Source: Ylistrum balloti
Taxonomy: Eukaryota
NCBI RefSeq assembly: GCF_031769215.1
Contig: NW_026782366.1
Location: forward strand, 124,001-188,000
Reading direction: 5' to 3'
DNA: 64,000 nucleotides
In this document: in pieces, positions 34,538 through 63,888 of the stretch
Numbering within the stretch: the stretch's first letter is position 1
How the letters are laid out: every line of letters starts with the position of its first letter
The notes under the pieces: model-generated
The model's database searches: none
The model's input: the letters and a program-made list of their open reading frames with translations, nothing else
Told to the model about the DNA's origin: nothing
Program-made: the position numbers and the translations under genes

Positions 34538-34682
34538 ATTTTGAATCAAAACTTATGCAGACATGTTTCTTAAATTCAATATATTTAGATTGTTACTGAG
34601 TAAGTTAAAGAGGAATTCTGGAAGGGAAGTTGATAATAATTCACAAATTTATAATTTTTGCAGGTCGGTTGGATGGACCATC

Positions 34683-35927
34683 ATGGGAAACTCCAACAGC
34701 CACAAGCGGACTGGATGTTCCAACAAAGTGGAGCACTGGTCATTGATCCAGAATACACCAGTAACTGGAGTCTTGCAGTCTTGTTCTTATGGGAGATGGA
34801 TAAAAACTCAGCGCAGCATCTGTGGCTATGCAGACTATGCTGACTTCACTACTTGTCGTGAGTCCAGGAGAAGATGTGGAGTACTTGCCAAACCTGACAC
34901 TACATGTGGACGGTACTTTGTGCCAAGTTTCAAATCCAAGTCAGAATTGCTGATTGTAGAAAAGCAGAAATGGTATGTTGGTAACTTCAAACTCCCACGT
35001 GTACCTGTCCCAGACCCACAGTGGGTTCGCCATTCCCAACATAATCGAAATCGAAGGGAATGCAGTGTGGTTGCATACAGCAATGGACTTGTTGTTGTTC
35101 AAATAAACACCAACAGGTATTATTTGTCACCAAAATTCTATATACTAGACATTGAAACAGGTCAGGTTGTCGGCCATTTTCTGATGTTCTACCACTGTAG
35201 GAGATGGTATGAGTGCTATATTTCACCCAATAAACACAGAATTCTTTTACGTCCTGACAGTCTCACAAGGGTGGTTGCTTTACCTGACAATTACCTGTTG
35301 GAAAATGTCTACATTAATCCAAACACCAATCACTCTAGTCTGTCCGTGGGAACCATCCCGCCAATTTTTCGTGCTCATGTTATGACATTTAATGCCTTAG
35401 CTGGTGACAACAGAATTGTCATGGCAAGCCAGAAAGATCTAGAAATCCGCTCTGTGGAAACATGGGATATTCTGTATGGTGTTCAGAATCTGGATCTCCC
35501 AACAAACATACAACAGATGAAATCCAGTCCTCTTGGTGACTTCATCGCTCTACGCTGTGTTCACCCTGTTCATTGTAAGGAATACAGCGTCAATGTAATT
35601 GCTGTGCTCAACTTCAGAACTTTAGACATTTTGTTCAAAGTGGATGTGTGTGGTTGCTACTGGCCTGTGTCAGAGGTTATCAATCTCCAAGTGTTCCCTT
35701 ACTTCTCGCCTGGAGAAGCATCCATTTCTCTGATGAAGAACTGTACCTATCACCGCAAGGTTGTCACATACAAGCTCCCTATTCCCCGCTTGAATTTGCA
35801 ATACCTGTGTCGCAGAGCAATACTCCATCTCACAAATTTCAGAGATCTGAGCAAACTTCCTCTTCCAAAGAAGATCATCAGCTTTCTCCAGGCTAAACCA
35901 CCTGTTATCAAGGACAAGCCATTGTAA
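34683..35927 (+). CDS. SOCS-box protein with a degenerate WD40/beta-propeller-like region and predicted N-myristoylation (414 aa, single coding exon)
   Basis: Acceptor TTTTGCAG at 34663 precedes ACCATCATGG, so the likely start is MGNSNS (G2, S6) rather than the track's 34563. Strand-like SPxG/DIETG repeats. C-terminal LNLQYLCRRAI...LSKLPLPKKIISFL is a BC box plus LPLP Cul5 box. Confidence 0.85.
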   Translation: MGNSNSHKRTGCSNKVEHWSLIQNTPVTGVLQSCSYGRWIKTQRSICGYADYADFTTCRESRRRCGVLAKPDTTCGRYFVPSFKSKSELLIVEKQKWYVGNFKLPRVPVPDPQWVRHSQHNRNRRECSVVAYSNGLVVVQINTNRYYLSPKFYILDIETGQVVGHFLMFYHCRRWYECYISPNKHRILLRPDSLTRVVALPDNYLLENVYINPNTNHSSLSVGTIPPIFRAHVMTFNALAGDNRIVMASQKDLEIRSVETWDILYGVQNLDLPTNIQQMKSSPLGDFIALRCVHPVHCKEYSVNVIAVLNFRTLDILFKVDVCGCYWPVSEVINLQVFPYFSPGEASISLMKNCTYHRKVVTYKLPIPRLNLQYLCRRAILHLTNFRDLSKLPLPKKIISFLQAKPPVIKDKPL

Positions 35928-45260: not shown

Positions 45261-48200
45261 TTAAATATTATTGTATCGACGTTTTGTATTATATGCACTC
45301 AGATATAATTTAGCTGCTATAGTTAAACATTTTCGTTCTAATTCGCTTCTTGAATGATATAACTTCAGTGTTGATGACGAGCGGTTTTTTATGCAAATTA
45401 TCCACATAGCCGCACAGTGCTTGACATAATGCACAACTCCTTTGTCGTCTGGTAGTGTATACCTGGAGAACAAAAAAAAGTATTTCACCAAAGTCATGAT
45501 ATCAAATATCTACTTTAGTTCAACCATTACCCTAATCTACGCTCTACACTCTGCTACTTAAAAGTGTAGTTTACACAAAGTTAGCGCAGATATTGTTTTA
45601 AACAGATAGCAAGTGTGTATCTTGTGATGAGCACGGAGATCCTTGAAAATGCGCCGTCAAAATATGACCTAATGTTCCATAAGAGTAAGTCTCTTCTGCC
45701 GAATTGACCTCGCCTGTCATATAAATCTAGGTCAGTTTAGATAATATAACGTTCTCAAATTGAGAGCAGGCATAGTAAAAACGAATATTTTATTTTGAGA
45801 CACAGGAATAAGCATCGAACACTTCGTACTGAATACATCGCACAAAATATTTTCTGACGAGATTATGACAACAACCATCAACCTTTTCCCCAGCATCGTT
45901 TACCTTTATCTTTCGTCATTTGGAACAATCAGATATCAGATCAGCTGACACATGTTAAGCTGATGGTTGTAAACTATTTACACGAAAGGGCAATGAAAAC
46001 AACAAAGCGTATAAGAAAGCTCATTGGTTCGGTAATCCTGTTGGTGACGTTGTTACTAAAAGTTGTAAGAAGACTGACACGTGAATAACTCTAATCAAAT
46101 CAAATTTAAATTAAGTTGCAGTAGAGCCAAATATTGAATTAAAGTACACCATGCAGCTGTTTCGTCTTTCTAGGATTCACCACTGATGATACAGCCTAAA
46201 TATTTGAAACATAGGAGACGAATTAGAAAAATCAAATTTGGTCGAAAGAAGTGTAAAACACCAGATGTGAAGGTGTACTGACCCCAAAATTTGGTAAAAT
46301 TCATAACTTGCAATACTGAGTGATTTCAAAATTATTTCAAATGCATGTGTATATTCTGACCTGTACCACGATCGAAATCAATTTTAAAAGTTTGCAGGTT
46401 ACGCCAAACGTCAGGAATTAAAGTCACCAGCAGTGCGTACTTGTACAAGCGAGGAAGTTAATTTTGTACTCGATTTATCTCTTTTTAAGTGAAAATGACG
46501 TCACTTTTCGTAATATTTGGTAAGTCTCCACGTTCAAAACAAAATCTTAAATGCATTAAACCCGTCTATAGGGATATAAAGTAGAAATCTACTAACATGA
46601 TAACATGACAAACTTCTCACGTTAAATTGCACTTATCTAAGAAATTTTTTTTTGCCCTTACACAACGTAATTTTTCTGTGGTATGATCATGTCGCTGCTA
46701 GTGGTAAGCACACGTCCAGGAATGTGGATGATACTATACTTGATGTTGTCACTGTCGTTTTTGCCTTGTGGATTCGCCTGATAATTTGTGCTTTGTACCC
46801 GTTTCATTTTGACCCCCGCCGCGTCTGGGTAGTTCTTCTCAAATGTATCCTGCAATGAACATTTTATAAATTATGTAATTTTCTTAGATTTCGGAAGAGG
46901 CCACTGACAAGTAAACGTCACTTAAGTATTAAAATAAGTTATTTTAAAAGTGATCTTGACAGTCATTGTGTGTGCTTTTCAGAGGAAATAGTATTGGGTA
47001 AAAATCAGAACTAGCCCTTCAGAAGAAGCGATATAAGTTTATGTTTGACTATATCCTGTTCCTTTAGCTAGGCCAAAAAGACCCTAAACATCTGCACTTT
47101 ACCAATAATTACCAAGATATTCTCGATCTTGATTGTCAATTTACCTCTAGAAAATAAAACATCATTTTCCATTCTTGTGGTAAGATGAACTCATTTACAT
47201 CTATATTGGCTGCATATCCAAAGCCACGCAGGTATTCCATACAATGGAACAGAGCCACGCGCTTGTCCTGGTCTAACTGATAACGGACAGAATCGTTAGT
47301 CGTCGTGAAGAAACTACGATCGACGTCATCTGCAACATAGAAAAACAACATAATTTATACTTGTCAATCTCTTGAAGCAATCTTGTTTAAAGAGAATCAA
47401 AAGCTTATATGTCTGAATATTTTCATACAAGTCAATATATTTAATGAAGAAACAGAGTGATGTATAGTATGTCTATATTTATAAAAATAATCACTTATAT
47501 AGGGGTTTCCGAGATTTCGATGACGCGTCGCTATTGTTACGCAGTTTGATTTAGTTGTTATGACACCGCCAAATAATGTCATCGAAAGTTTGTAATGTTT
47601 CGTATCGGTCTCATGATTTAAAGAAATGAAAAAAAAAACTTTTATTTGAATAAAAGTGTCTTGTTCAGGATGAAAAGACAACCTTTGTGAGAAGCTGACT
47701 AAACACATGAAATGTCTTGTAACATTCAGGTAATCTGCAAAGTCAGTAAATGTTTAAAATACAGTTTGACGTACCGTGTGATCTGCCGGGTAACGGGAAA
47801 GGGAATTCCTGAATATCCAGAAATCCATTTCTCATATAGTAACTTAACACTGTCATAACTTGTGCATCTGGAAGCTGAAGTACCAAGTATATGTTTTCTA
47901 CTCCTGTAGATTTATAATACTCGAGCCATTCGATTAATTGCATAGGACTGACATCTTGTGTTACCACGGAATAGATAACAAATCTGTTGGGTGTTCTTTG
48001 CTTTGGGGGATAGATAACATTTGTAAACTGTTCAGTCATTGCACATTTCTTAGAAGCTGGTATCATAGCAACGGAAATCAATAGTTTTTGAATAGACGAT
48101 AAGGAACATCTGTATTGTCGAGCAGATATAAGGTTTTCTTTGTATTCACCATTTAGTGGTTTTGCAAAAACTTGAATTAGCTGCTCTTTAGAAATCAAAA

Positions 48201-48333
48201 TACAACATTTGTAGCTTTTGTCCTTTGACCCATCCCAGACATTTAAGGTTATTTGGCTTTCATCTTCAATGTGTACCACTGCAGAAAACACAGAAAGTAA
48301 GGTCGAATCTTGTAACCTGCTGTGATTGTGCTT
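45261..48333 (-). CDS. Glycosyltransferase family 92 (DUF23, GALT-1-like) protein; 4 downstream exons, first exon unresolved
   Basis: Exons 48333-47775, 47329-47145, 46849-46662, 45462-45261; GT-AG and phase-compatible (377 aa from Lys). Motifs QLIEWLEYYKSTGVENIY, VLSYYMRNGFLDI..F, Q..ALFHCM...YAANIDVNEFILP and VVHY..HC are typical of GT92. Confidence 0.8.
46147..46188 (-). ncRNA. Degenerate minimal type-I hammerhead ribozyme, copy B
   Basis: Minus strand reads CATCA-GTGGTGA-ATC-CTAGAAA-GAC-GAAA-CAGCTG-CA-TGGTG. Stem I (CAUCA/UGGUG), GAAA and palindromic stem III are present; the core and cleavage triplet are mutated. Confidence 0.55.
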
Positions 48334-51300
48334 CTGAAATGAAATGGGGGTAAAGATATACATAATGTATCACGCAGATAATACAAAAATGCAGATAATG
48401 AATTTCCCGACTCATAAATTGTATTACATTGATATATCACTTAAGCGATTACAGAGGTGTGTGCATGTCTGTCGATCTATCAAGCGAAAATAATTATTCT
48501 GTATTTAAAATCGTGTTCAATCTAGATTCTGATTTAATTCATTTGAGAATATTGGATGATGACCCGCTTCAGTGACAGTAGATTATAGCAATTACATTTG
48601 ATAAAGTGACAGAATCATCATGAGTCCATGCGCATATGCTTAGCTGACAACATCCAAAACGGTCGCCATCTGGCGATTGTTTTTTTCTTTTTTTTTCACA
48701 ATAAGGAGCTAAGAATATCTTCCCAGTACCTCTCAAGAAATAAAAGATTTGAACAGTCAGCCTTCTTTCTTAAAACTATATTCAATATAAACACTTACCC
48801 ATACTGGTTTAAAGTACTCGAAATGTATTAAAAATGTGCAAATCATTATACCAAAAGTTGTGCTCACCAATGAACACACTTTCAAGGAAATTGGCATGCG
48901 CACGTGACAGGAACTGTAAACCATGTCCCTGTAACAGAGATAGAAATTATGTTAAATATATCACATTAGCTTCTCCATAACAATGTTGTAAGTTATAACA
49001 TTTGGGTTGGGAAATAGCAGATCCACATTATTTTTAGAATTGTCAGTGTGAACTATAAAACTCATTGAAGTAGGTTTTAAAGAATAACTGTTTGTATCTA
49101 TTTAGAGAATTCATTGTCCCGTTTAAAAAATCTGTTCATCAGTGACGCTTTTTAAGTAATAATGCTTCAGGTAATTTATATTTGTTCTGGATTGAATTTG
49201 ACTACATTGTCATTATCAAGCTATCATTCAACCATAAACACAACAATACAAGTTTACGTCACCCATTGTGAAGTGTACATTAACGGTAAACCAACATATT
49301 TTATTTTGTAAAGCATATAAACATTTGATTATAAAATATGTTCTTGACTGAAGATTTCATCTTACGTCAGACTTTATCAAGAGGAAAGGAAATGAGACTA
49401 TTAAAACAATCATTATGTACAGAATTTAATGATACAATGCTGAAGTGACGTTTCTTTAAATCAAATAATAACACTCTATAATAAGGAAGATATAAAGAGA
49501 CAAACTGCATCGTCAAAATCCCATGAAAATATCACACCAATACGTACCGTTAGAATAGTGACAATGTCGATGAAGGGTTGACTTTACATGGTATGTAAAA
49601 CGGACACTACACAGCCGAATAGAGTCCAAACACTCAAATGACCGTGTTCTACCCATACCTTGAATGTTATCAGTCACCATTGTTGTTTTATCTGCCGGCA
49701 CGACGATAGTTCAAAAGGTGCTTTAAGGTCATAGTTCATCCAATTAAAATAATCGATCAATTGAAAAGTTGTCTCTATGTTTATATATATACCTTTAATC
49801 AAAGGTAATATTAGTGAAAAAAGTTATGCCCTGCGTAGAATCAAAGTCATTGAATTAACTTCTACTGCCACGGGTTAATTCATTAGAACAGTGGCTTTGT
49901 TCGGAATATACACATGTACTTGAGGTAATTTTAAAATCATCCGATATATGAGATATGCTAAATTTATTGTAAAGAGAAGGTATCTAGTTGATTTTATTGG
50001 GATGGAGTTTATTTGATTGTATGATTCTTTTTGTTTTATTCACAACTGTATATAAGAGAACTAAATAGCGAATTAAACTTTGGTAACAATGGCTACAACT
50101 TATCATTTTAAAGGTCAGGAAATATATCAATTAACAGCATGGACTAAGCTATATATCTAAATCTGTGCTGGCTTTTACACGAATCGTCTGCTATCTAAGA
50201 GAAATAAGAGTTACCTTGTGTATATTAAGTCAGTTGTAACTTATCTATTGCGCAGTTTAAACTTCAGGCAACACATTATTTTAATTGAAACTTCTTTTTA
50301 GCAACACTTAAACCTTGTTTTTTATCAATAATGTCAAGCTCTCGTATTGTATGTAACAATGTAAACTAGCATTTACGATCCAAAGCAATTCAGTTCAATG
50401 GTTACATAACAATTACACATGGTTACACAGCTTTAAGATTCGAGTAATTTAATTTCATCAAAGTTCTTTTGTTTTGAAACATACATGAAAAAGTTAATAT
50501 TTAAAGAAAGTTTGTTTATTGATGTATTTACTTTTCTGTGTAGTAGTGATAAGTGTGTATAACGAGTATCTTACGGTGTATAGAAAGTGGGTGTCTATTC
50601 AACCTGTCTCAGACATATACATAGGGAATACCAGTACTTTTCTAAAAACGGAAATCAACCATGAAATGTCTTCTCGCTAGATACACCTCCCTCTTTGAAG
50701 AATTCATCTCTATATAAAAATCACTCAGACGTGGCCTTTTGACAATGTTGTATAGCAGAGAAGTATCAACCCAGAACTTAATGAAAAACATCCATGTAAA
50801 GACGGGCAACGGGTGCATAGAATTTTACGGAACGACATTTTGATACTTAAAAGTGCTTTCATGTTCAAGAAACAAGAGAGAAGTAAAAAAATATATATAA
50901 AACACGACGTCAACTTACAATAACCACTTTTGTTTTTTACGGATGGATGTGAGTCTTAATTAGAAGAACAGCTTATGCTATTTCATGGTAAAAGGCAAAT
51001 GAGCATTGCACTTGGCCACCAGACAACTCGACAGGCAAAATCCTTTGAGAATTTTTAACCACATTTTACGTTTGTATTAAGCCTGATAATATGTGTTTAA
51101 ATTCAACCAGTTTACATAATATATCAATATTTGGCAACGTTACATTATATATTCATCTTAAGCAACTGCTAGGTTTCTTTTATATACAGGTCTATCCTGG
51201 TTATATCATGGATACAGATTCTTTGAAGCTACACTAGATTAACCAGATTTTACATTCAGATTTCACCAGATCTCGTTATGACTTAACCTGACTATAATAC

Positions 51301-52264: not shown

Positions 52265-55200
52265 ATGGCAAACGTTATCTCTGGCAAGTTTATCTTTATA
52301 ACTCTCGTTTTTCTTATACACCAATTCAATGGATGCTTTCCTATGATGTTGGGACGAAACTTGAAAATATCCGCTTTCAATATGAAAATGTTTGGGGACA
52401 AGAAAATGGAGCAAAGTGGCGCTATCGATATTCTCGTAAAGGTATGTAAGTCATCACTTTACAATAACACATATATCGGTTTTTGCATTTTTAAAAGCTT
52501 CTTCTTATGAATCAAATGTTCATAAGCCATTTAAAGATAATCATACTATAAACACTTACTTTCTGAGTAAAATCGGTTGTATTATATGTACTGTTTTAAC
52601 TGTTTATTTGTAGGACAAGATAAAGTATTTAGTACCTCTCATTGAAAAACCTTTGATGAGAATGTCGCCACGTTTTTAGTATGGAAATGACATTCAACAA
52701 CAGACATTGGTAACAGAAAACCCATGACCATACGTAGCTTTATTTGTTTGTCGAATTTATGTACAAATACACTCTTACCAAATATTACCTTATACTGAAT
52801 TCTGTTCAAAGACGAAAGGCAGATAACCAATGATAATTCAAACTAGGGTGTTCAGTACTCACAGAAGGGATATTAGCAAATGAGATTTTACTATAATTGG
52901 TAAATAGAAATTGGTGACATAACATTGATGTTATCAATTGAATTAGTTCTTGGTTGAGTCTAAATGTCCTAATTCGGTCCTGCGAAAACACTGTATTGCA
53001 TGTGTACTTCAATAAATAAATAACTATTCGTAGATACGTGACATTTTCAAACTGATCTTTTCATTTCTGAACTTTAACTGATCCTTAAAGTAAATGAACA
53101 CGAATCAGAAGTAGGTATGCTTATTGACATTCACAGAGTCGTATTTGAAATATTTTCGTCGTGGCGCGATGGCTAAACAATTACATATATATTTATACTA
53201 GAAGACTCGGTGTCGAGTCTATGATCAAAACATATGTTTATCTGGCGAATTAAATGGAAACCTACCTGTTGTAATTAAATATTTCTAATACAATGTATGT
53301 TGAAAACAGCTCGATTAGATAGCTAAGTGTACTATCGAGCGCATGAAATAGCTAACACATGTTCATTTTATATGGTACAATATTTTATTAGCAATATAAA
53401 TTTAAGTTGTACGATTGTGGTTGCTTATACAAAAAATATTTTGTAGGTAATCCTTTTATGATTGACTCTGCTGAGAGTTATCACAGAAATAACAGACCTA
53501 TTATGCCGAAAATAAGAATAGGTTTTCGTTGCTCAAATGACGATTTACTCCCAAAACAGCGGAAATAAAAGAAAGCAAACTATTTATTTGGCTTTCCCTA
53601 AAGAAGTAACGTGATTTTGTACTGGGTTAAGACTACATTATGTCCGCTATCACAACACATAACGCATGGCTAACACAGAATGGAAAAGATGACATCGATT
53701 CATGTCGCGTAAAAGACAGATTACCTTCATCACCTTTTATATGAGAAAATAACTGGGTCGGAACCAATGAAAAATCACCACGGTGTTACGAGGGACTTTA
53801 GTCAGAGATGATCAGATGATCAGAGGGAATCATAAAGTTAAAAGAAACAATTGTTCATTAGTCAGCCTTCTTCCTGTACAGTCAAGTACATAAGTTGCCA
53901 CCGTGCAAAGAAAAAACCAACGGACATTTTCTTTTTATGGAAGGAAACATTATTGTATTTTGCTGTGTTGATTTCTCCTAAATCATCTTATAACTTCAAC
54001 TATTCGATGTATCGTTGTTCGTCTTGTCCTTTCTTGGTGATGAATAAGTCAAGCTTTGCAGTAATAATCAATAATTTTCTTGATGATATTAAATGACTTC
54101 TGTGCAATTCGAAAATTCGAAAGAAACCAATTCGAGGTACCTTCCGGAATAGTTTCAAATTTGAACAAGCATGCTATAGATTTGATTCAAACTCTAGCTG
54201 AAATAGTATGTATCTTATCGAGATTTTGCTATTACCTCACGAAAATTTTGGTTTTTTTAACCTGTGCAGATCATTACTCGATATGATATCACTATCGTCC
54301 AAGAAATAAGAGATGTAGACGGTTCTTCATTCAAAGAATTGATGGAACTAATCAACAAGTAAGTCTTACCCAAGCCTTTCCTCACTGTGGTTTCTTAATT
54401 GTATGGGCTTCTGATTCAACGCGAAACAATCACACTTATGTAAGGCATTCAAAGCAACAATAACAACAAACATCTTCAGATACCAAAAGTTTTAAAATCA
54501 GAACCCGAAAGACAGATGATCAACATACTCCTTACTGCACATACTGTCTGACGGATAAACTTGTATTGAACAGTTAAGTTTATACTCTCGGTGATTAAAT
54601 TGTGTCCTGAGCAGAGTTGAGGCACTGGAAACATGGTAGTATAAGTATGACTGTATGAGCCTCATTTTACGCAACGTTACTGTGTGGTTTCTTTTTCTAA
54701 TGATGAACACTTAATCAACTCGCATCCATCTTTTGTATCATTATTTGACGACACAATCAAAAGCCTTATTTAATGGATTAACGCCTGGTGCATTTGAACT
54801 ATAAAGTCCATATCTTATTGTTTCAGAGCGGAATTTTCTGGATTATATTCAGAATGAAATGCCATTCTTTTTAATATACCTGTCCGACCGAAATCTCTCA
54901 TACATCGTCACTTAACAAATGAATCAAACTATTTGCAGTAATAAATACTAAATAATATTGTTTGCATATAAAAGAAACTTTTCAAGAAACCAGACATAAT
55001 GTAAAATTATTCCATTTATTTATGTCGTTCGTATTCAGCCTTCTTCCTATACAGTCCAGTTCGTAAGTTGCCACCGTGCAAAGAAAAATCAACGGACATT
55101 TTCTTTTTATGGAAGGAAACATTATTGTATTTTGCTGTGAAAAAAAGAAACTTTTCAAGAAACCAGACATAATGTAAAATTATTCCATTTATTTATGTCG

Positions 55201-58200
55201 TTCGTATTCAGATCAGATGCAAGTACGGAGTATGATAGCGCGTTGAGTGAGCGTCTGGGAAGAAGTCACATCAAAGAAGAATATGGAATTATATACAGGT
55301 AGATAATGACTTCATTTAGTGCACTTCCCCATCTACATATTGACTTTTCTTTCGATCACTTTGGCCCTAGAATGACGTAACATGTGTATATTGCAGTTTA
55401 ATTCATTGCTTGGCTGAACTGTATCCAATTCTAAATTGTTAAAAGGTGCTATTCACTTGTATAATCTTAGAATCGTGAAATTACTTTCATTGATCAAGAT
55501 ATCGTCGTTGAACCAGAAGACGCTTACCCTTCCGAAAATCTGTTCTTATTTTCTTCGTAATATTTCATGAGTTAACGAATATTTCTTAGCTCATAGATTG
55601 TCGCAGTTTCACCGGATTTCAGTTTGAATTATAATTCTGTTCAAATATCGCCGTTATCATCGTTGACGGATGGCTGCCATGATAAACCGTAAAAATGTCA
55701 CAACAACTACTGCATATCTCTAAGGAAATTTCTACATATGATTTAATTTTTATCATAGGAAAGATAGCGTCACTCTCGAAAGTACATACCAGTATCCAGA
55801 CCCGAACTACACCTTTTTTGAGAGACCACCTTTTGCATTTAAAGTTCGCCTGGCAGAAGCGGATGGTATGATTTAAATCTGGCCTGAACGTGTGCCTTAT
55901 ATTTCAACATAATATTTCAGTCATTGAAATAATGTATAGGGTAACGGAATTTCTCCCAAAATCGCGTGATAACAATGATATAACTGCTAATTACTGCTAT
56001 ATATTTTATTACATATTATACAGACTATGCAAATGTGATATCACTGATAGAAAGATCTCCAACTTAAAAACCTTGGATGATGTTAATAAATAATATTTTT
56101 TGAAACACAAAATATCGAAATTAATATGCTTATCCTCCATGGACATCCTCCATTTTTCCTCGTTTTATTCATAGAGCAAAAGTATACATCAACATGATTT
56201 TTTTTATAACTAGAACTATTACCCTGGAAAGCTGTATTCAAATCTCATCGTGATGAACATGCTTACATAAGGTTTGAAATGAGAGGGGTGGGGGCCTTCT
56301 GTAAATATGACGTCACATCGACAAGACAAAGTATTGATATAGCGAAACTGAAAGTAGATTATTACAAACTTTTACAGAATTATACGTCCTTGGGATTATT
56401 GCTATCCACACCAAGCCAAGAGACGCTGTTAGGGAGATAGACATGCTCGTCGATGCATACCAGAAGACCAGCGATCATTGGAATGGGTTAAAGGTGGGTA
56501 CATAATCAAAAGTTAATGTTTATCAAATCAACTTCAAATTAATGTATGTTATATAAGCTTAATACCACGTGTTCTTTACAGAATATCCTGATCGCTGGAG
56601 ACTTTAATGCTGGGTGCAACTATGTCACACCTAGTAAGATGGAGACGATTTTGCTCCGGACCGACCCACGGTTCACCTGGCTTATCGTTGATCAAGTTGA
56701 CACTACAACTTCTGACACTGACTGTGCTTACGACAGGTAGGTGAGAAAAAGATTAACATTCATTTGTAGTAGAAATGCAGTTAATTATATCATATATCAT
56801 TAAACATTGCAATATACACTGTAACTTTCTTAGGTAAAAAGTGTAAAATTACATCACATTAAACATACGAGGTGATTTACTGTATAACCCTCACTTATAC
56901 AATAAATCTATGGCAGCACATTGCTTATTAATAACATAAAGCTAGTCTACGTGATAGCGTGCTGGTATTAAATTATCCACCCCTTCCCTATTGAAATCGT
57001 ACAAATGATCGAAAACGATGATTTAAAACACTTACCTTCTCCAATACATTCATACCATCAGACAGAATGAAAAGAACGGAAGAAACTGTCAGATAAGTAT
57101 GACATATATTTGATTCGTATTGACGGAAGGTGCAGGAGAAATCAACAAATATTTCCAATAAACTAAAAAAATTTAAAAGTGAAAGACAAGACGTACATTT
57201 TAGCACATTGAAGTGATAGGACCATCATCTTATCTCTAGAAAGTAGATATCGTCATTAATACACATTTCTTTATATCTTTGTCAGATTTGTGGCTGCTGG
57301 TGATGAGCTCAAAGCTGCTATAGTTCCAGGAAGTGCGCGTGCATTCAGGTTTGACCAAGAGTACAAGCTGACAGAAAATGAGGTAACATATCCTTAAATA
57401 CATTTATTTGAATTATATAACATATTTCATTTGACTCTTATACATCTAATTATTAAAAACTTTCAAGTGATAGGAGCCACCCAATTGTGTCTTTTGTACA
57501 ATCTTCACGATTGCATTTAGTAGACACTGGACTGCTGGCGGACTTTTTGTCCCGAGGTTTGTCGTAATCTGCTTAACATGTTTTAGTTCATGTGCAAGTA
57601 TTTGACGTTCTTCCAAAATTATCAGTAATGTGAAAATTAGAAAACATGTTTAATTACGGAGTAAATGCACCTACCTCTCCCTAGATTTTAAAATTTTCTT
57701 CGATAACTTGGAATCTTCCTCAGCTGCCACCGTGGATTAAAAATTTAGGGCCATAGCATCACTGACGAGTCCTAGAAAGACGAATTAGCTGAATAGTGCT
57801 GTTCTATTCATTCTGTATCTTGTTCTAAATTTCCATTAAAATAAGTTATTCACTTGTGAGTCTTTTGGACAATCTAAATGTACTCATCAACTTCATTAAA
57901 ATGCAAGAGGAATGACATGCCTCTATTGATCATAGGATGCTCCATGATGTACCCAAAGATATGCGACCCTCAAAATATTTCGGCATACGACCAAGATATT
58001 AATTGACACAAAATCGACAGCCCTTCATTGAAGTAGAACTAGTATGCTACCTGTCAAGTATCATATCACTGGACTTTAGTTAGTCAACAATAATGACCTT
58101 GAAAGGTGCCAATGCCAATTGTTTCACCAAATGCCTCTTTTCTTTACCTCTTGGTTCAGTAGCAGTGTTATTACCTGGACACATTTCACTCGTATACATC

Positions 58201-59463
58201 AAAGAACTTCATTTGAATATGATTGTTTGGAACGGGAATAGCAGGAAATGAAATAGCTTGATAAATAAAATCGAAAATTCCGAAATGCCGAAGCGCCTGT
58301 ATTTTTCCAAAACGAAATATTTCCATCAAGCGCACATTAACCTTGTCAAGCTAGGGACCAATGAAATGCGTTTCACACAGATTCTGTGTACAATCAAACT
58401 GCAAATTATTTGCAAGTGTTAAACGACATTGGCACTGACAACATATGCGAAATCGACTCAGAGGAAATACCGAAAATCTTTATCGGATGATGGTTTATGA
58501 TACAACCTTCTTGACAGGGTGTTCTTGGAAAAGAAATGTCTTGGCCAATAATGATATTTATGAAATGTTAATATTTACAGACAAAGGCTGTCAGTGACCA
58601 TTATCCCATCGAAATGGATATAAGAGGAAAGGGTAAGTAATACAATGTATATGTTAAGTCATCACTAGATCGGTTACTGGTAGAGTGATATTATTCCGAG
58701 CGCTATACAAATTTATTACGTGTATCTAGTCAACCGGGAGACTTAATATACAGTATTCCATTTCACAAATTAAACTACATCTATGCCTTATTGGTACGTT
58801 TTCTTTTTTGTGTGAAAGTTAAAAATTAGAAGTTTTGTGATAAGCGCAATTCATACCATTGCCCGTTTGCATTTAATTGTTTATTTCTCATCTAACATTT
58901 TCTTCTATACACGTTAAAACATAATTCTGTGTTCATATTGTATTACGAACGTGTCTTTCGGTGCCAGTCCGATTCAGGTAAACGAATACAACAGTTATAT
59001 CAACTTTTTTCTTCTTTCAGTAAAACAATCCGAACTTGCAAAGTTTCATAGTGAATTGACTATGTCCTTTGAAGATGACACACCGCACACAAAAAAGCAA
59101 GTTCGGCGGATAACGAGATCAGTTGATTTTAAAAAATATGGTTTCACCATTTCTTATGAAATCAGCAGCAACACCAAAACACATGTTCTGGCTTCGCGGG
59201 ATCACCTGAAAAAATCCGATATATTGAACATAGTAGAGAACCTCCGCAAAGACTCCTCACCTTTCATCAGAGAATCTGTGTTCGAGTTGATAAAACTGTA
59301 TCTTAACTCGCCATTCATGGAAGGCGTTCGTGGGGCTCATGGTTTCCTGGTTCCATACAAACTACAGAGTTATAATTTCGTGATAGCATGTCAGTGGGAA
59401 GGAGACTGCACGTGTAGCTTTAGATTAACAAGGCATATCGTGAAGATCAACAGCTTTACCTAA
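52265..59463 (+). CDS. DNASE1: Secreted deoxyribonuclease I family protein with a candidate C-terminal extension (9 exons, 440 aa; 295 aa if intron 8 is read through)
   Basis: Exons 52265-52441, 54270-54358, 55212-55298, 55759-55865, 56378-56493, 56582-56736, 57286-57382, 58581-58632, 59021-59463; all phase-compatible. Signal peptide present. Motifs LKISAFN..FG, QEIRD (E39), LGR..KE, IHTKP (H134), GDFNAGC (D168), CAYDR (D212) and SDHYP (H252), in DNase I numbering. The symbol denotes the family, not proven orthology. Confidence 0.92.
54970..55211 (+). other. 69-bp direct duplication of the exon-3 acceptor, flanking a ~101-bp copy of intron-1 sequence
   Basis: 54970-55038 is identical to 55143-55211. 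The insert 55039-55139 matches 53866-53967 at about 94%. Confidence 0.9.
57755..57800 (+). ncRNA. Degenerate minimal type-I hammerhead ribozyme, copy C (in DNase I intron 7, sense orientation)
   Basis: AGCATCA-CTGACGA-GTC-CTAGAAA-GAC-GAAT-TAGCTG-AA-TAGTGCT. CUGANGA, stem II and stem I (6 of 7 pairs) are intact; GAAA is changed to GAAU and the triplet is mutated. Confidence 0.6.
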
Positions 59464-59969
59464 AAGGTCAAAGTTTACAATTTCAGAGAAATACCTTCAT
59501 TTCAGAAACATAAAGCATTTTGAAATGGCTTTTACACGCGCATTTTGAAATGAAGTAACTGCAAACGATGTCAATCTGATGGGGTTTTTTTTTATCAAAA
59601 TAGAGGATAAAATACATAATAATCACTATCAGACTTCCTCTTTAGTATCTTTGTATTTATATATCAACAGAATTGTTCTCATTAACGCTTTTGTAATCTG
59701 CTTGTATGACTGTGTATGGCACAAAAATCTTTGTTCATTACTCACAATCTTCGTCCAAAAGTGTCCGTGAAGACCGATAACGTGGTATAGATACATACAG
59801 TGGTCCTATAAATATAAAATGTATGCGTTTGTGATTCCCTAATGCTTGGTATTTACATGTTGATACTCGTGACTAGTTAACATCGCGGTATAGACAGATA
59901 ACACAGACTTAAAACACAGAGATGCGTGTAGATGACGACAGATTTATCATGGGGTGTACTCGATGAAAA

Positions 59970-61935: not shown

Positions 61936-63888
61936 TTATTTAAATTGAAGATAATTCTTCAATGTTCTAGGGATCATAAAATTCTCTAGGTCAGTGATAT
62001 GACCTTTCTGTAGGTTATTTCTGATAGTGTATCGACATGACCTCAGTAAAGATCTTGGAGTGTTGAGTTCACTCTCCATCCACTGATTAAAAAGTGTGTA
62101 AGATTCTCGCAAGTCTGTGATTTTATCACCATGGAGAAGGTCCATATCACGATAACAGTCCATAGACAATAACATGCGTATTGTTTCCATTTTACCAAAT
62201 CGGATTGATTTCGATAAAGGAGTGCCACCTGAAAAACAAATCATAAAAATTATTTCACTCCCAATTTGTTTGTGATTAAGCACCTTGTACTAGAGTTCAG
62301 GAAAGTCTATGTGTTATACATGTTCTGTCCTTCTTTTAACCTGGTAATCCTAACATAACTTGTGAACCCACCTTGTGATCTAGTTACAGTAACTCAACTA
62401 ACCCTGTTACTATATTACTTTAACTCTCAAGAGGGCTGCAATAGTTTAGGCATTAGACCGTTAGACTGATGTAACCTAAGGTGAAAATCTGGGACGTTTA
62501 ATGTTTCTCAAGAAACTGCAATCATGGATCATCCTGTGGTGTGCTTTACTTCAGATGGTTTGAATAAAATATGTGGATTATTGATGATGGTGCAATATTT
62601 CACATCAACTTACAATTTGTTACTGGTTTTAATAAGTATGTGAAAAAAATAATAAAAATGTGTGTTTATTCCATGGGCCGGATATCTCGAACCTCTTTTA
62701 AGAGTTTGGCTGGTCAGCAATCAGCAAACCCAAGTTACATAGCATAGTCAGTAGAATAACATATTGAAGAAAAAGAGTTGAACATAGAGTCTAAGACACA
62801 ATGATAGGCCATGAACATGTACATCTACTAAACAATAGTGTATCAATTAAACACCAACACCAAAGATAAATAGATACCATTTTTGTCTACAGCATTAATA
62901 TCAGCACCTCTCTGAACCAATAACCGTGTGATTGCAGGGACAGCCCTAGAGTTGAGCTCTACCACAGAGTGAAATGTTGTCCTTCTCATATTATCTGCCT
63001 GAAAATTAAACATGATAAAGTCAGTTTAGTTTAAATATTACTACTGTAACTTTGATGAAGGTAGACACAAGGGAAAAATGACCAGGTTAACATTACAATC
63101 ATCGTAATTACTAAGTTAAGTAACTAGAACAATGACAGAGGTCAATAACTAAGGAACCTGCTGTCTGTCTGAATGTATACCCCCATTCATCAACAGGCAG
63201 AATATACTAGGAATGAGAAAGCACGATTTGAATTTTAAGATGCATCTGCTTAGAAAATTTGCATCTGAAACCTGATCTCAACTAAGCTTAGTTAAACCTA
63301 AGCCTCAAGTCTGAATAAAATCTAACAAATTGCTAATATGTCAGGGCCATTTCCCAAAAACACTGTGTATTGGGTGGGACCAGTTACCAAATAACTGTGG
63401 AAAAAATAGCTCTTTCAGTTTTACTTCAACATATCAGTTTACGAACCAAATGTCATTGTTTATTGTCTTAAATGATCCAACTGAATCATACCTCATATTC
63501 CTTACTGTTCCTTGCTGTTTAATTCATTAACCTTATTCTCAAACTAAAGAATTGTATATAGGTTCAACTGCCAAACACTTAACCTCACTGGACCTAATAT
63601 TTAATAGACTTTGAACTTCACATTCTCTGTATTGTTTCCCACGTGTCACTTAACATAGCTAACATTACATGTAAGTATGGTATGCATTTAACATTCATAC
63701 CAATGCATAACTTCAACAGATTTGGATGTATGTTTGTGTTAAAAAAATTCATAAACAGAAATATGTTACCTTATCAACTTGAGCTCCTCCATCCAATAAC
63801 ATTTCCACGAGTGCAAGATCTCTAGTACTTACAGCCATCATCAGTGGTGTAGCACCTTTCTTGTTGGCAATGTTAACATTAGCACCAC
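61936..63888 (-). CDS. 3' exons of an ankyrin-repeat and SOCS-box (ASB-like) protein; the 5' part lies beyond the window
   Basis: Exons 63888-63770 (GANVNIANKKGATPLMMAV...LVEMLLDGGAQVDK), 62998-62878 (ADNMRRTTFH...LLVQRGADINAVDKN) and 62228-61936 (GGTPLSKSI...TPRSLLRSCRYTIRNNL...IPRTLKNYL*); phases 1/0/1 are compatible. Confidence 0.88.

What the first reader, a model, noticed from the sequence alone, without database searches (positions are those of the whole stretch)
58581..59463. DNase I with an extra ~147-residue C-terminal domain on a separate exon, plus a built-in short isoform
Seen: exon 8 ends after SDHYPIEMDIRGK at a phase-1 GTAAGT donor. A strong acceptor (TTTTTCTTCTTTCAG, 59020) opens a phase-1, stop-free 443-nt exon encoding VKQSELAKF...YGFTISYE...ACQWEGDCTCSFRLTRHIVKINSFT*. 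Reading through the donor instead gives ...RGKGK*, a 295-aa protein of canonical length. Known: vertebrate DNase I family members end shortly after SDHYP or carry only short tails. Inference: the extension is an alpha/beta-looking accessory domain with three clustered Cys that I cannot assign; it might target the enzyme to a substrate, membrane or extracellular trap, and splicing may switch it on or off.
Basis: partly seen in the sequence, partly recalled or inferred. Interest (0 to 1): 0.7.

Follow-up and report, generated by a model that had tools for sequence, protein, structure and literature searches.

The report
Scallop DNase I with orphan tail
One of the saucer scallop's several DNA-cutting DNase I genes carries an extra last exon that adds a roughly 145-residue domain of unknown fold. 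The same layout is found in one other unidentified animal, so the exon is very probably real, but what it does is unknown and no RNA data could be checked.

Summary
Exon 8 ends at 58632 after ...SDHYPIEMDIRGK with a phase-1 GTAAGT donor. A strong acceptor at 59020 opens a stop-free 443-nt exon (59021-59463).

The window is Ylistrum balloti (saucer scallop). RefSeq already models exactly this splice as XP_060077171.1, "deoxyribonuclease-1-like", 436 aa. Nine GT-AG exons in the window translate to it letter for letter.

The extension (residues 290-436) is single copy and not a transposon. It has no Pfam family, no solved-structure relative and no Atlas relative.

A search of 1.84 billion proteins found one relative (27% identity, E 7e-5). 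It lies on a genomic contig from a public metagenome sample. That contig has the same SDHYP exon, the same phase-1 GTAAGT donor after "GK", an intron of about 270 nt, and a phase-1 acceptor. This conservation is the main evidence that the exon codes and is joined to DNase I.

At least three DNase I paralogues in this genome stop eight residues after SDHYP/SDHFP and have neither the donor nor the extension.

The tail is basic (pI 9.3) on an acidic core (pI 5.0) and keeps two cysteines. I read it as a non-catalytic accessory or targeting domain; this is inference.

No RNA run was available, so splicing and the "short isoform switch" remain untested.

The parts
52265..52441 (+). Coding exon 1: start codon, signal-peptide-like hydrophobic N-terminus (MANVISGKFIFITLVFLIHQFNG...) and the start of the mature DNase I core (LKISAFN...)
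   Evidence: Exact match to P0001 residues 1-59. Residue 33 aligns with residue 1 of mature human DNase I.
54270..54358 (+). Coding exon 2 (IITRYDITIVQEIRD...; holds the Glu39 equivalent)
55224..55298 (+). Coding exon 3 (TEYDSALSERLGRSHIKEEYGIIY; holds the Glu78 equivalent)
55759..55865 (+). Coding exon 4
56378..56493 (+). Coding exon 5 (IAIHTKP; holds the His134 equivalent)
56582..56736 (+). Coding exon 6 (GDFNAGC...TDCAYD; holds the Asp168, Asn170 and Asp212 equivalents and the Cys173-Cys209 pair)
57286..57382 (+). Coding exon 7
58581..58632 (+). Coding exon 8: TKAVSDHYPIEMDIRGK (His252 equivalent), ending in a phase-1 AGG|GTAAGT donor. The paralogues have their stop codon one codon before the point where this exon ends.
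58633..59020 (+). Intron 8 (388 nt, GT..AG). If retained it adds GK then TAA, giving a 292-aa product. It holds one ATTAAA at 58769.
59021..59463 (+). Coding exon 9: the 147-residue extension (residues 290-436) plus the stop codon. It is basic, single copy and has no known family. The conserved cysteines C413 and C421 are encoded at 59389-59391 and 59413-59415.

Best explanation
The 443-nt ORF is the genuine last coding exon of one paralogue of the scallop's DNase I gene family. The gene encodes a secreted, catalytically complete DNase I: a signal-peptide-like N-terminus, all active-site residues and the structural disulfide.

Its reading frame does not end at the ancestral stop eight residues after SDHYP. 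Instead it runs one codon further into a consensus GTAAGT donor and is spliced in phase 1 to a downstream exon. That exon adds a lineage-restricted, fast-evolving domain of about 145 residues. The predicted order of elements is beta-beta-beta-alpha-alpha-beta-beta. Two conserved cysteines sit in the last hairpin and probably form a disulfide.

The domain is basic (pI 9.3) and is tethered to an acidic catalytic core (pI 5.0). My preferred mechanism, which is inference, is a non-catalytic accessory module that raises affinity for polyanionic substrates or surfaces such as DNA, chromatin or trap-like DNA. This would be functionally comparable to the much shorter basic tail of vertebrate DNASE1L3.

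What is shown: the exon anatomy, the match to the RefSeq model, single-copy status, and conservation of the two-exon architecture in a second species. What is inferred: that the junction is used in mRNA, the disulfide, and the function.
For: 1. Nine GT-AG exons translate exactly to XP_060077171.1.
2. phmmer against 1.84 billion proteins finds, besides the protein itself, one relative, P0002 (E 7.2e-5, 27% identity over 129 residues). The pairwise BLASTP E-value is 6e-10.
3. P0002 and P0003 lie on genomic contigs L002 and L003. Those contigs carry ...AIVVSDHYPIELKLNGK, a phase-1 A|GTAAGT donor, an intron of about 270 nt, and an acceptor tag|TA. Similarity to the scallop tail starts at the first codons after the acceptor ([IV][NK][RQ][QS]EL). 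In L002 the tail's open frame begins only three codons upstream of the acceptor.
4. Three paralogues in the same genome whose last DNase exon was read to its end stop with TGA eight residues after SDHYP/SDHFP. They have no GTAAGT there, and neither the tail sequence nor its profile matches anywhere else in the genome.
5. The exon is single copy at protein and DNA level.
6. An open frame of this length did not occur in 60 simulated windows. Its codon-position base composition resembles exons 1-8 and not intron 8.
7. In a second individual (DNA run X1) the 5,981 bases laid carry 39 SNPs. Only 2 fall in the 1,134 coding bases, both synonymous, one of them in exon 9.
8. The DNase core is complete.
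9. The charge contrast is pI 9.3 against 5.0.
Against: - No RNA evidence was available. The only run served is DNA. The RefSeq entry is an automated XP model whose transcript support I could not inspect.
- No annotated protein of any other bivalve in the databases carries a detectable relative of the tail. The second organism is unidentified, so the depth of conservation is unknown.
- Both structure models are of low confidence (pLDDT 53 and 45).
- The functional reading rests only on charge and on analogy.
- The tail of the second species, without its 28-residue basic end, is near neutral (pI 7.8). This weakens the polyanion-binding argument.
Confidence: 0.6

Rival explanations
1. The tail is an intramolecular inhibitor or pro-domain. 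It masks the DNA-binding groove of the nuclease during synthesis or storage and is removed or displaced on secretion or activation.
For: A basic domain tethered to an acidic nuclease core could sit in the DNA-binding groove. Secreted nucleases are often kept inactive until needed (general knowledge). The tail evolves fast (26% identity).
Against: No conserved processing site lies at or near the junction: RGK|VKQ in the scallop against NGK|INR in the other species. Canonical DNase I paralogues in the same genome manage without such a domain. The docking test gave no verdict, so it counts neither way.
Confidence: 0.15
2. The ORF is not part of the DNase protein. The DNase ends at ...RGKGK* by read-through, and the downstream ORF is either an independent small gene or an untranslated 3' exon that the gene predictor joined on.
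For: No transcript evidence could be obtained. The read-through form has canonical DNase I length. An ATTAAA lies in intron 8.
Against: A perfect GTAAGT donor and a phase-matched acceptor occur in both species, and only in the copies that have the tail. Homology starts right at the acceptor, upstream of any in-frame ATG, and in L002 a stop lies three codons before it. An independent product starting at the first Met would lack a signal peptide, yet the second species' tail carries five N-glycosylation sequons, which are typical of secreted proteins.
Confidence: 0.08
3. The tail descends from a degenerate DnaQ-like 3'-5' exonuclease domain, that is, a second and now inactive nuclease or nucleic-acid-binding fold fused to DNase I.
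For: The three-sequence profile A1 matches residues 108-190 of the exonuclease domain of the Plasmodium apicoplast DNA polymerase, E 1.6e-4, 24.6 bits.
Against: Neither tail sequence alone reaches that protein even at E 10. Pfam's exonuclease families are not hit. The Asp-x-Glu ExoI and the ExoII acidic residues are not conserved in the alignment. Fold searches give no DnaQ-like match, with a best Z of 5.2, which is noise level. The target is a compositionally biased Plasmodium protein, and it is the only independent hit.
Confidence: 0.07
4. The ORF is a chance open frame or a fragment of a mobile element.
For: None beyond the AT-rich context and the repeats in neighbouring introns.
Against: It is single copy at DNA and protein level. 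It is conserved in a second organism in the same gene context. An open frame of this length was absent from 60 simulated windows.
Confidence: 0.02

Closest known systems
RefSeq XP_060077171.1, deoxyribonuclease-1-like [Ylistrum balloti]
   Same: It is this very gene model. The 436 aa are identical to the nine window exons, including the exon 8 to exon 9 junction.
   Different: It is an automated prediction with a generic name. The C-terminal 147 residues carry no domain annotation (only PF03372 is precomputed), and I found no description of them in the literature searched.
Vertebrate DNASE1L3 (DNase gamma; PDB 7kiu)
   Same: It has a DNase I catalytic core (E 5.9e-59 to this protein) followed by a basic C-terminal appendage. 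From my own knowledge of the literature, that appendage widens the enzyme's substrate range to chromatin and lipid-coated DNA.
   Different: The DNASE1L3 tail is a helix of about 20 residues. Here the addition is about 145 residues with predicted strands and helices, has two conserved cysteines, sits on its own exon, and shows no sequence similarity to that tail.
Canonical DNase I (human 4awn, bovine 1dnk) and the scallop's own paralogues
   Same: Residues 33-285 align end to end with mature DNase I 1-258. The catalytic Glu39, Glu78, His134, Asp168, Asn170, Asp212 and His252 equivalents and the Cys173-Cys209 pair are present.
   Different: Canonical enzymes and three paralogues in this genome stop eight residues after SDHYP/SDHFP. 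This copy runs on into a donor site and a further exon.
Vertebrate DNASE1L1 (C-terminal membrane-anchor signal; from my own knowledge)
   Same: It is a DNase I family member with a functional C-terminal addition.
   Different: The scallop tail has no hydrophobic C-terminal stretch. It ends ...HIVKINSFT and has a GRAVY score of -0.41, so a lipid-anchor signal is unlikely.

Membership tests
DNase I family (Exo_endo_phos superfamily, PF03372) | Significant match to the family profile and to solved DNase I structures over the whole catalytic domain | tested here: met
   PF03372 matches residues 38-279 at 32.2 bits, above the 24.5 cut-off. Human DNase I 4awn matches at E 2.2e-59, residues 33-285 against 1-258 of 260.
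DNase I family (Exo_endo_phos superfamily, PF03372) | Catalytic and metal-binding residues (human mature numbering Glu39, Glu78, His134, Asp168, Asn170, Asp212, His252) | tested here: met
   All are conserved in the printed alignment: QEIRD, KEEY, AIHTKP, GDFNAGC, YDRF, SDHYP.
DNase I family (Exo_endo_phos superfamily, PF03372) | Secretory signal and the structural Cys173-Cys209 disulfide | tested here: met
   A hydrophobic N-terminus of 23-32 residues precedes the position aligned with mature residue 1. NAGC and TDCAYDR are conserved. Signal cleavage itself was not predicted with a dedicated tool.
DNase I family (Exo_endo_phos superfamily, PF03372) | Endonuclease activity on double-stranded DNA | not testable with these tools
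   This needs an enzyme assay.
Any curated domain family, for the tail (residues 290-436) | Profile match above threshold | tested here: not met
   Pfam gives only Med26 at 16.3 bits, below the 20.6 cut-off. Nothing is found for P0002. There is no Atlas neighbour by features. No Foldseek hit has E <= 0.001, and the best VIA Z is 5.2.
DnaQ-like 3'-5' exonuclease domain, for the tail | ExoI Asp-x-Glu and ExoII Asn-x(2-3)-Phe/Tyr-Asp acidic motifs | tested here: not met
   Only one Asp (D18 of the tail) is invariant in the N-terminal strand region. The ExoII Asp of the Plasmodium enzyme aligns with non-acidic residues.
DnaQ-like 3'-5' exonuclease domain, for the tail | Significant sequence or fold similarity to family members | tested here: inconclusive
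   The profile hits one Plasmodium polymerase at E 1.6e-4. The single sequences do not, and Pfam and the fold searches do not.

The most novel reading that the evidence does not exclude
The tail is a newly arisen, rapidly evolving protein domain with a fold not yet represented in structure databases. On this reading it was recruited when the stop region of a duplicated DNase I gene became a 5' splice site. It would give this paralogue a distinct biological role, for example binding or clearing protein-coated or trap-like extracellular DNA in digestion or immunity, or self-inhibition until release. Intron retention would provide a canonical-length enzyme from the same gene.
Probability: 0.25. 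Interest if true: 0.55.

Novelty: new variant of a known kind. Interest (0 to 1): 0.3.

Why it matters
DNase I family enzymes are specialised largely through their C-termini: the basic tail of DNASE1L3 and the membrane-anchor signal of DNASE1L1. A whole extra folded domain on an invertebrate DNase I would be a further, independent case of that principle. It also shows how a terminal exon can be gained at an old stop codon after gene duplication.

It is a modest finding. The protein is already in RefSeq under a generic name, the domain is an orphan known from two organisms, and its function is open. Its practical value is as a clean test case: compare the full-length and tail-less enzyme on naked and on protein-bound DNA.

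Tried and rejected
- **RNA evidence.** Laid on 53900-59880 it proved to be genomic DNA: even contig cover of the introns and no intron-skipping joints. Splicing could therefore not be tested. The only joints seen are repeat-to-repeat artefacts around 55360-55460 and 57485-57785.
- **Word-index protein searches.** Searches with the tail alone, with P0001 restricted to residues 291-436, and with the profile A1 found nothing beyond P0001 and P0002.
- **Metagenome contig scan** with A1: 172 pattern matches, none confirmed.
- **ESM Atlas**, by features and by structure: no usable neighbour; TM at most 0.39.
- **AlphaFold2** on both orthologues with the three-row alignment: pLDDT 53 and 45.
- **Fold searches.** The Foldseek PDB top hit was volvatoxin A2 at E 0.044 and TM 0.20, and the best VIA-wide Z was 5.2. 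Both are at noise level.
- **Complex prediction**, DNase core against tail: score 0.00, "no answer". This is not evidence either way.
- **Transposon or repeat origin:** rejected, because the exon is single copy.
- **Identifying the host organism** of SRR11455649 / SAMN14422906 through the paper library: no paper names these accessions.
- **Literature** on a bivalve DNase I C-terminal domain: nothing relevant found.
- **Spliced models.** I sent no spliced model of my own to any search tool. The exon was searched by reference, and full-length work used the database protein P0001 as returned. Exons were joined only inside a script, to check identity with P0001.

Full report
**What is in the sequence**

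- Exon 8 (58581-58632) encodes TKAVSDHYPIEMDIRGK and ends AGG|GTAAGT in phase 1.
- Reading through the donor gives Gly-Lys-TAA.
- At 59020/59021 a pyrimidine-rich acceptor (ttcttctttcag|TA) opens a 443-nt exon, in phase, that ends with TAA at 59461-59463.
- The stop-free frame around this exon is 181 codons. In 60 first-order Markov simulations of the 64-kb window (34.6% G+C) no frame reached that length. The longest was 179 and the mean of the maxima was 137.
- Codon-position base composition of the exon resembles exons 1-8 and not intron 8.

**Which gene it is**

A search of 1.84 billion protein representatives with the 146-residue translation returned two proteins.

The first, P0001, is 100% identical over residues 291-436 of a 436-aa protein. 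It is RefSeq XP_060077171.1, "deoxyribonuclease-1-like [Ylistrum balloti]".

I mapped that protein onto the window. Nine exons, all with GT-AG introns, translate to it exactly:
- 52265-52441
- 54270-54358
- 55224-55298
- 55759-55865
- 56378-56493
- 56582-56736
- 57286-57382
- 58581-58632
- 59021-59463

The first 285 residues are a complete DNase I.
- Pfam PF03372 covers residues 38-279.
- Residues 33-285 align with mature human DNase I 1-258 of 260 at E 2.2e-59.
- The Glu39, Glu78, His134, Asp168/Asn170, Asp212 and His252 equivalents and the Cys173-Cys209 pair are conserved.
- A hydrophobic N-terminus precedes the mature start.

The extension thus begins exactly where canonical DNase I ends.

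**Is the extra exon real?**

I could not get transcript evidence. It is genomic DNA from another individual.

That run still gives a small population signal. Of 39 SNPs in the 5,981 bases laid, only 2 fall in the 1,134 coding bases. Both are third-position synonymous changes: 56487 GGG>GGC and 59097 AAG>AAA. The second lies in exon 9.

The strongest evidence is comparative. The second hit of the big search, P0002 (168 aa, 27% identity, E 7.2e-5; pairwise BLASTP E 6e-10), and its near-identical sibling P0003 come from two assemblies of one public metagenome sample (Logan SRR11455649; ENA ERZ23487774, SAMN14422906).

Their contigs L002 and L003 are AT-rich eukaryotic genomic DNA and show the same two-exon anatomy:
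- an acceptor, then GCG ATA GTT GTG AGT GAC CAC TAT CCA ... GGA AAG A|GTAAGT, which reads AIVVSDHYPIELKLNGK with a phase-1 consensus donor after the same Gly-Lys;
- an intron of about 270 nt;
- an acceptor tag|TA, followed by INRQELDHYTPTMSVSIQD..., which aligns from its first codons with the scallop's VKQSELAKFHSELTMSFEDD....

In L002 the open frame of the tail starts only three codons before the acceptor, and homology begins before any in-frame ATG. The tail must therefore be reached by splicing.

The alignment has 38 invariant columns, including KTHV-A-R and two cysteines (C413 and C421 of the scallop protein).

By contrast, the genome search found about six further DNase I-like loci in Y. 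balloti. For three of them the last DNase exon could be read to its end. Each stops with TGA eight residues after SDHYP/SDHFP and has no GTAAGT there. Neither the tail nor the profile A1 finds anything else in the 648-Mb genome. So the donor site and the tail exon occur together, and only together.

The exon and its flanks are single copy at the DNA level. This excludes a transposon fragment.

Taken together, I put about 0.85 on the exon being a genuine coding exon joined to DNase I.

**What the tail is**

No family could be assigned.
- Pfam gives nothing above threshold for either orthologue.
- Word-index searches with the tail, with P0001 restricted to 291-436, and with the profile found no further relatives.
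- A scan of JGI metagenome contigs confirmed none.
- The ESM Atlas has no neighbour by features, and its own model has none above TM 0.36.

AlphaFold2 with the only alignment available (three rows, effectively two sequences) gave low-confidence models: pLDDT 53 for the scallop tail and 45 for the other. Both give the same order of elements: three or four strands, two helices, then a final beta-hairpin. The two conserved cysteines sit on the two strands of that hairpin, which suggests a disulfide; this is inference.

Fold searches with the scallop model stayed at noise level:
- Foldseek PDB: best E 0.044, TM 0.20.
- VIA-wide: best Z 5.2.
- Atlas: TM at most 0.39.

One lead remains open. The profile A1 matches residues 108-190 of the 3'-5' exonuclease domain of the Plasmodium apicoplast DNA polymerase at E 1.6e-4. 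I treat it as probably compositional, for these reasons:
- Neither single sequence reaches that protein at E 10.
- The exonuclease acidic motifs are not kept.
- Pfam's exonuclease models are silent.
- It is a single, compositionally biased target.

**How it most likely works**

The catalytic core is acidic (pI 5.0). The scallop tail is basic (pI 9.3, net about +6), as is the whole tail of the second organism (pI 9.1). Much of that second tail's charge, however, lies in an extra 28-residue C-terminal stretch.

The second organism's tail carries five N-glycosylation sequons, which fits a secreted protein. There is no hydrophobic end, so a lipid-anchor signal is unlikely.

My preferred reading is a non-catalytic accessory domain that increases the enzyme's grip on polyanionic substrates. 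It would work like the short basic tail of vertebrate DNASE1L3 without being related to it. I give that function about 0.3-0.35.

An intramolecular inhibitor or pro-domain is the main functional rival (about 0.15). No conserved cleavage site is seen at the junction. The docking test returned "no answer", which is evidence for nothing.

**The short isoform**

Retaining intron 8 would give a canonical-length DNase I, because the donor lies one codon past the position of the paralogues' stop. That is an interesting evolutionary trace: the tail was probably gained when the stop region of a duplicated gene became a donor site.

An early stop on intron retention is, however, expected in any AT-rich intron. 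In the second organism the read-through adds eight codons rather than two. Without RNA data, a regulated switch is unsupported.

**Limits**

- The second organism is unidentified. No paper in the library cites its accessions.
- No annotated bivalve proteome contains a detectable relative. Unannotated genomes could not be searched here, so absence elsewhere is not shown.
- I sent no spliced model of my own to a search tool. The exon was searched by reference, and the full-length protein used was the database record.

**Verdict**

The thing itself is a new variant of a known kind: a DNase I paralogue with an orphan C-terminal domain. It is already present as an unremarked automated model in RefSeq. 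Interest is modest.

Noticed in passing
L002:706-819 compared with L003:734-847: The two assemblies of the second organism's locus differ at five positions. All five lie inside the tail exon: three amino-acid changes (I>L, N>K, A>V) and one synonymous change. None lie in the roughly 760 shared non-coding bases. This could be two haplotypes with elevated diversity in the tail. The sample is too small to call.
   Followed up: partly
window 57700-57899 (intron 7), also 55300-55700 and 57300-57700: Word depth in DNA run X1 jumps to about 38,000 at 57700-57899, against about 10 elsewhere. Many repeat-to-repeat joints link 55360-55460, 57485-57505 and 57754-57785. These are very high-copy short repeats inside the DNase I introns.
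   Followed up: no
G000 C131:344088-345137 and 353377-354428; C701:377765, 991697, 2049842-2050905; C476:657180: The genome holds about six further DNase I-like loci, two of them in tandem on C131. The three whose last exon was read to its end stop with TGA eight residues after SDHYP/SDHFP.
   Followed up: partly
window 54212 and 58542: Individual X1 carries a 30-nt deletion about 30-60 nt upstream of the exon 2 acceptor, and a 10-nt deletion about 30-40 nt upstream of the exon 8 acceptor. These are indel polymorphisms close to possible branch-point regions.
   Followed up: no
window 34563-35927 (+) and 61936-62283 (-): Two long ORFs end in SOCS-box domains (PF07525, E 5e-6 and 9e-8). They are probably terminal exons of SOCS-box genes flanking the DNase gene.
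   Followed up: no
window 47743-48363 (-): A 206-codon ORF matches glycosyltransferase family 92 (PF01697, E 3.5e-6). It lies upstream of the DNase I gene on the opposite strand.
   Followed up: no
profile A1, positions 43-123: The profile alone matches the exonuclease domain of the Plasmodium apicoplast DNA polymerase (PDB 7sxl and others) at E 1.6e-4. The single sequences do not reproduce the match.
   Followed up: partly
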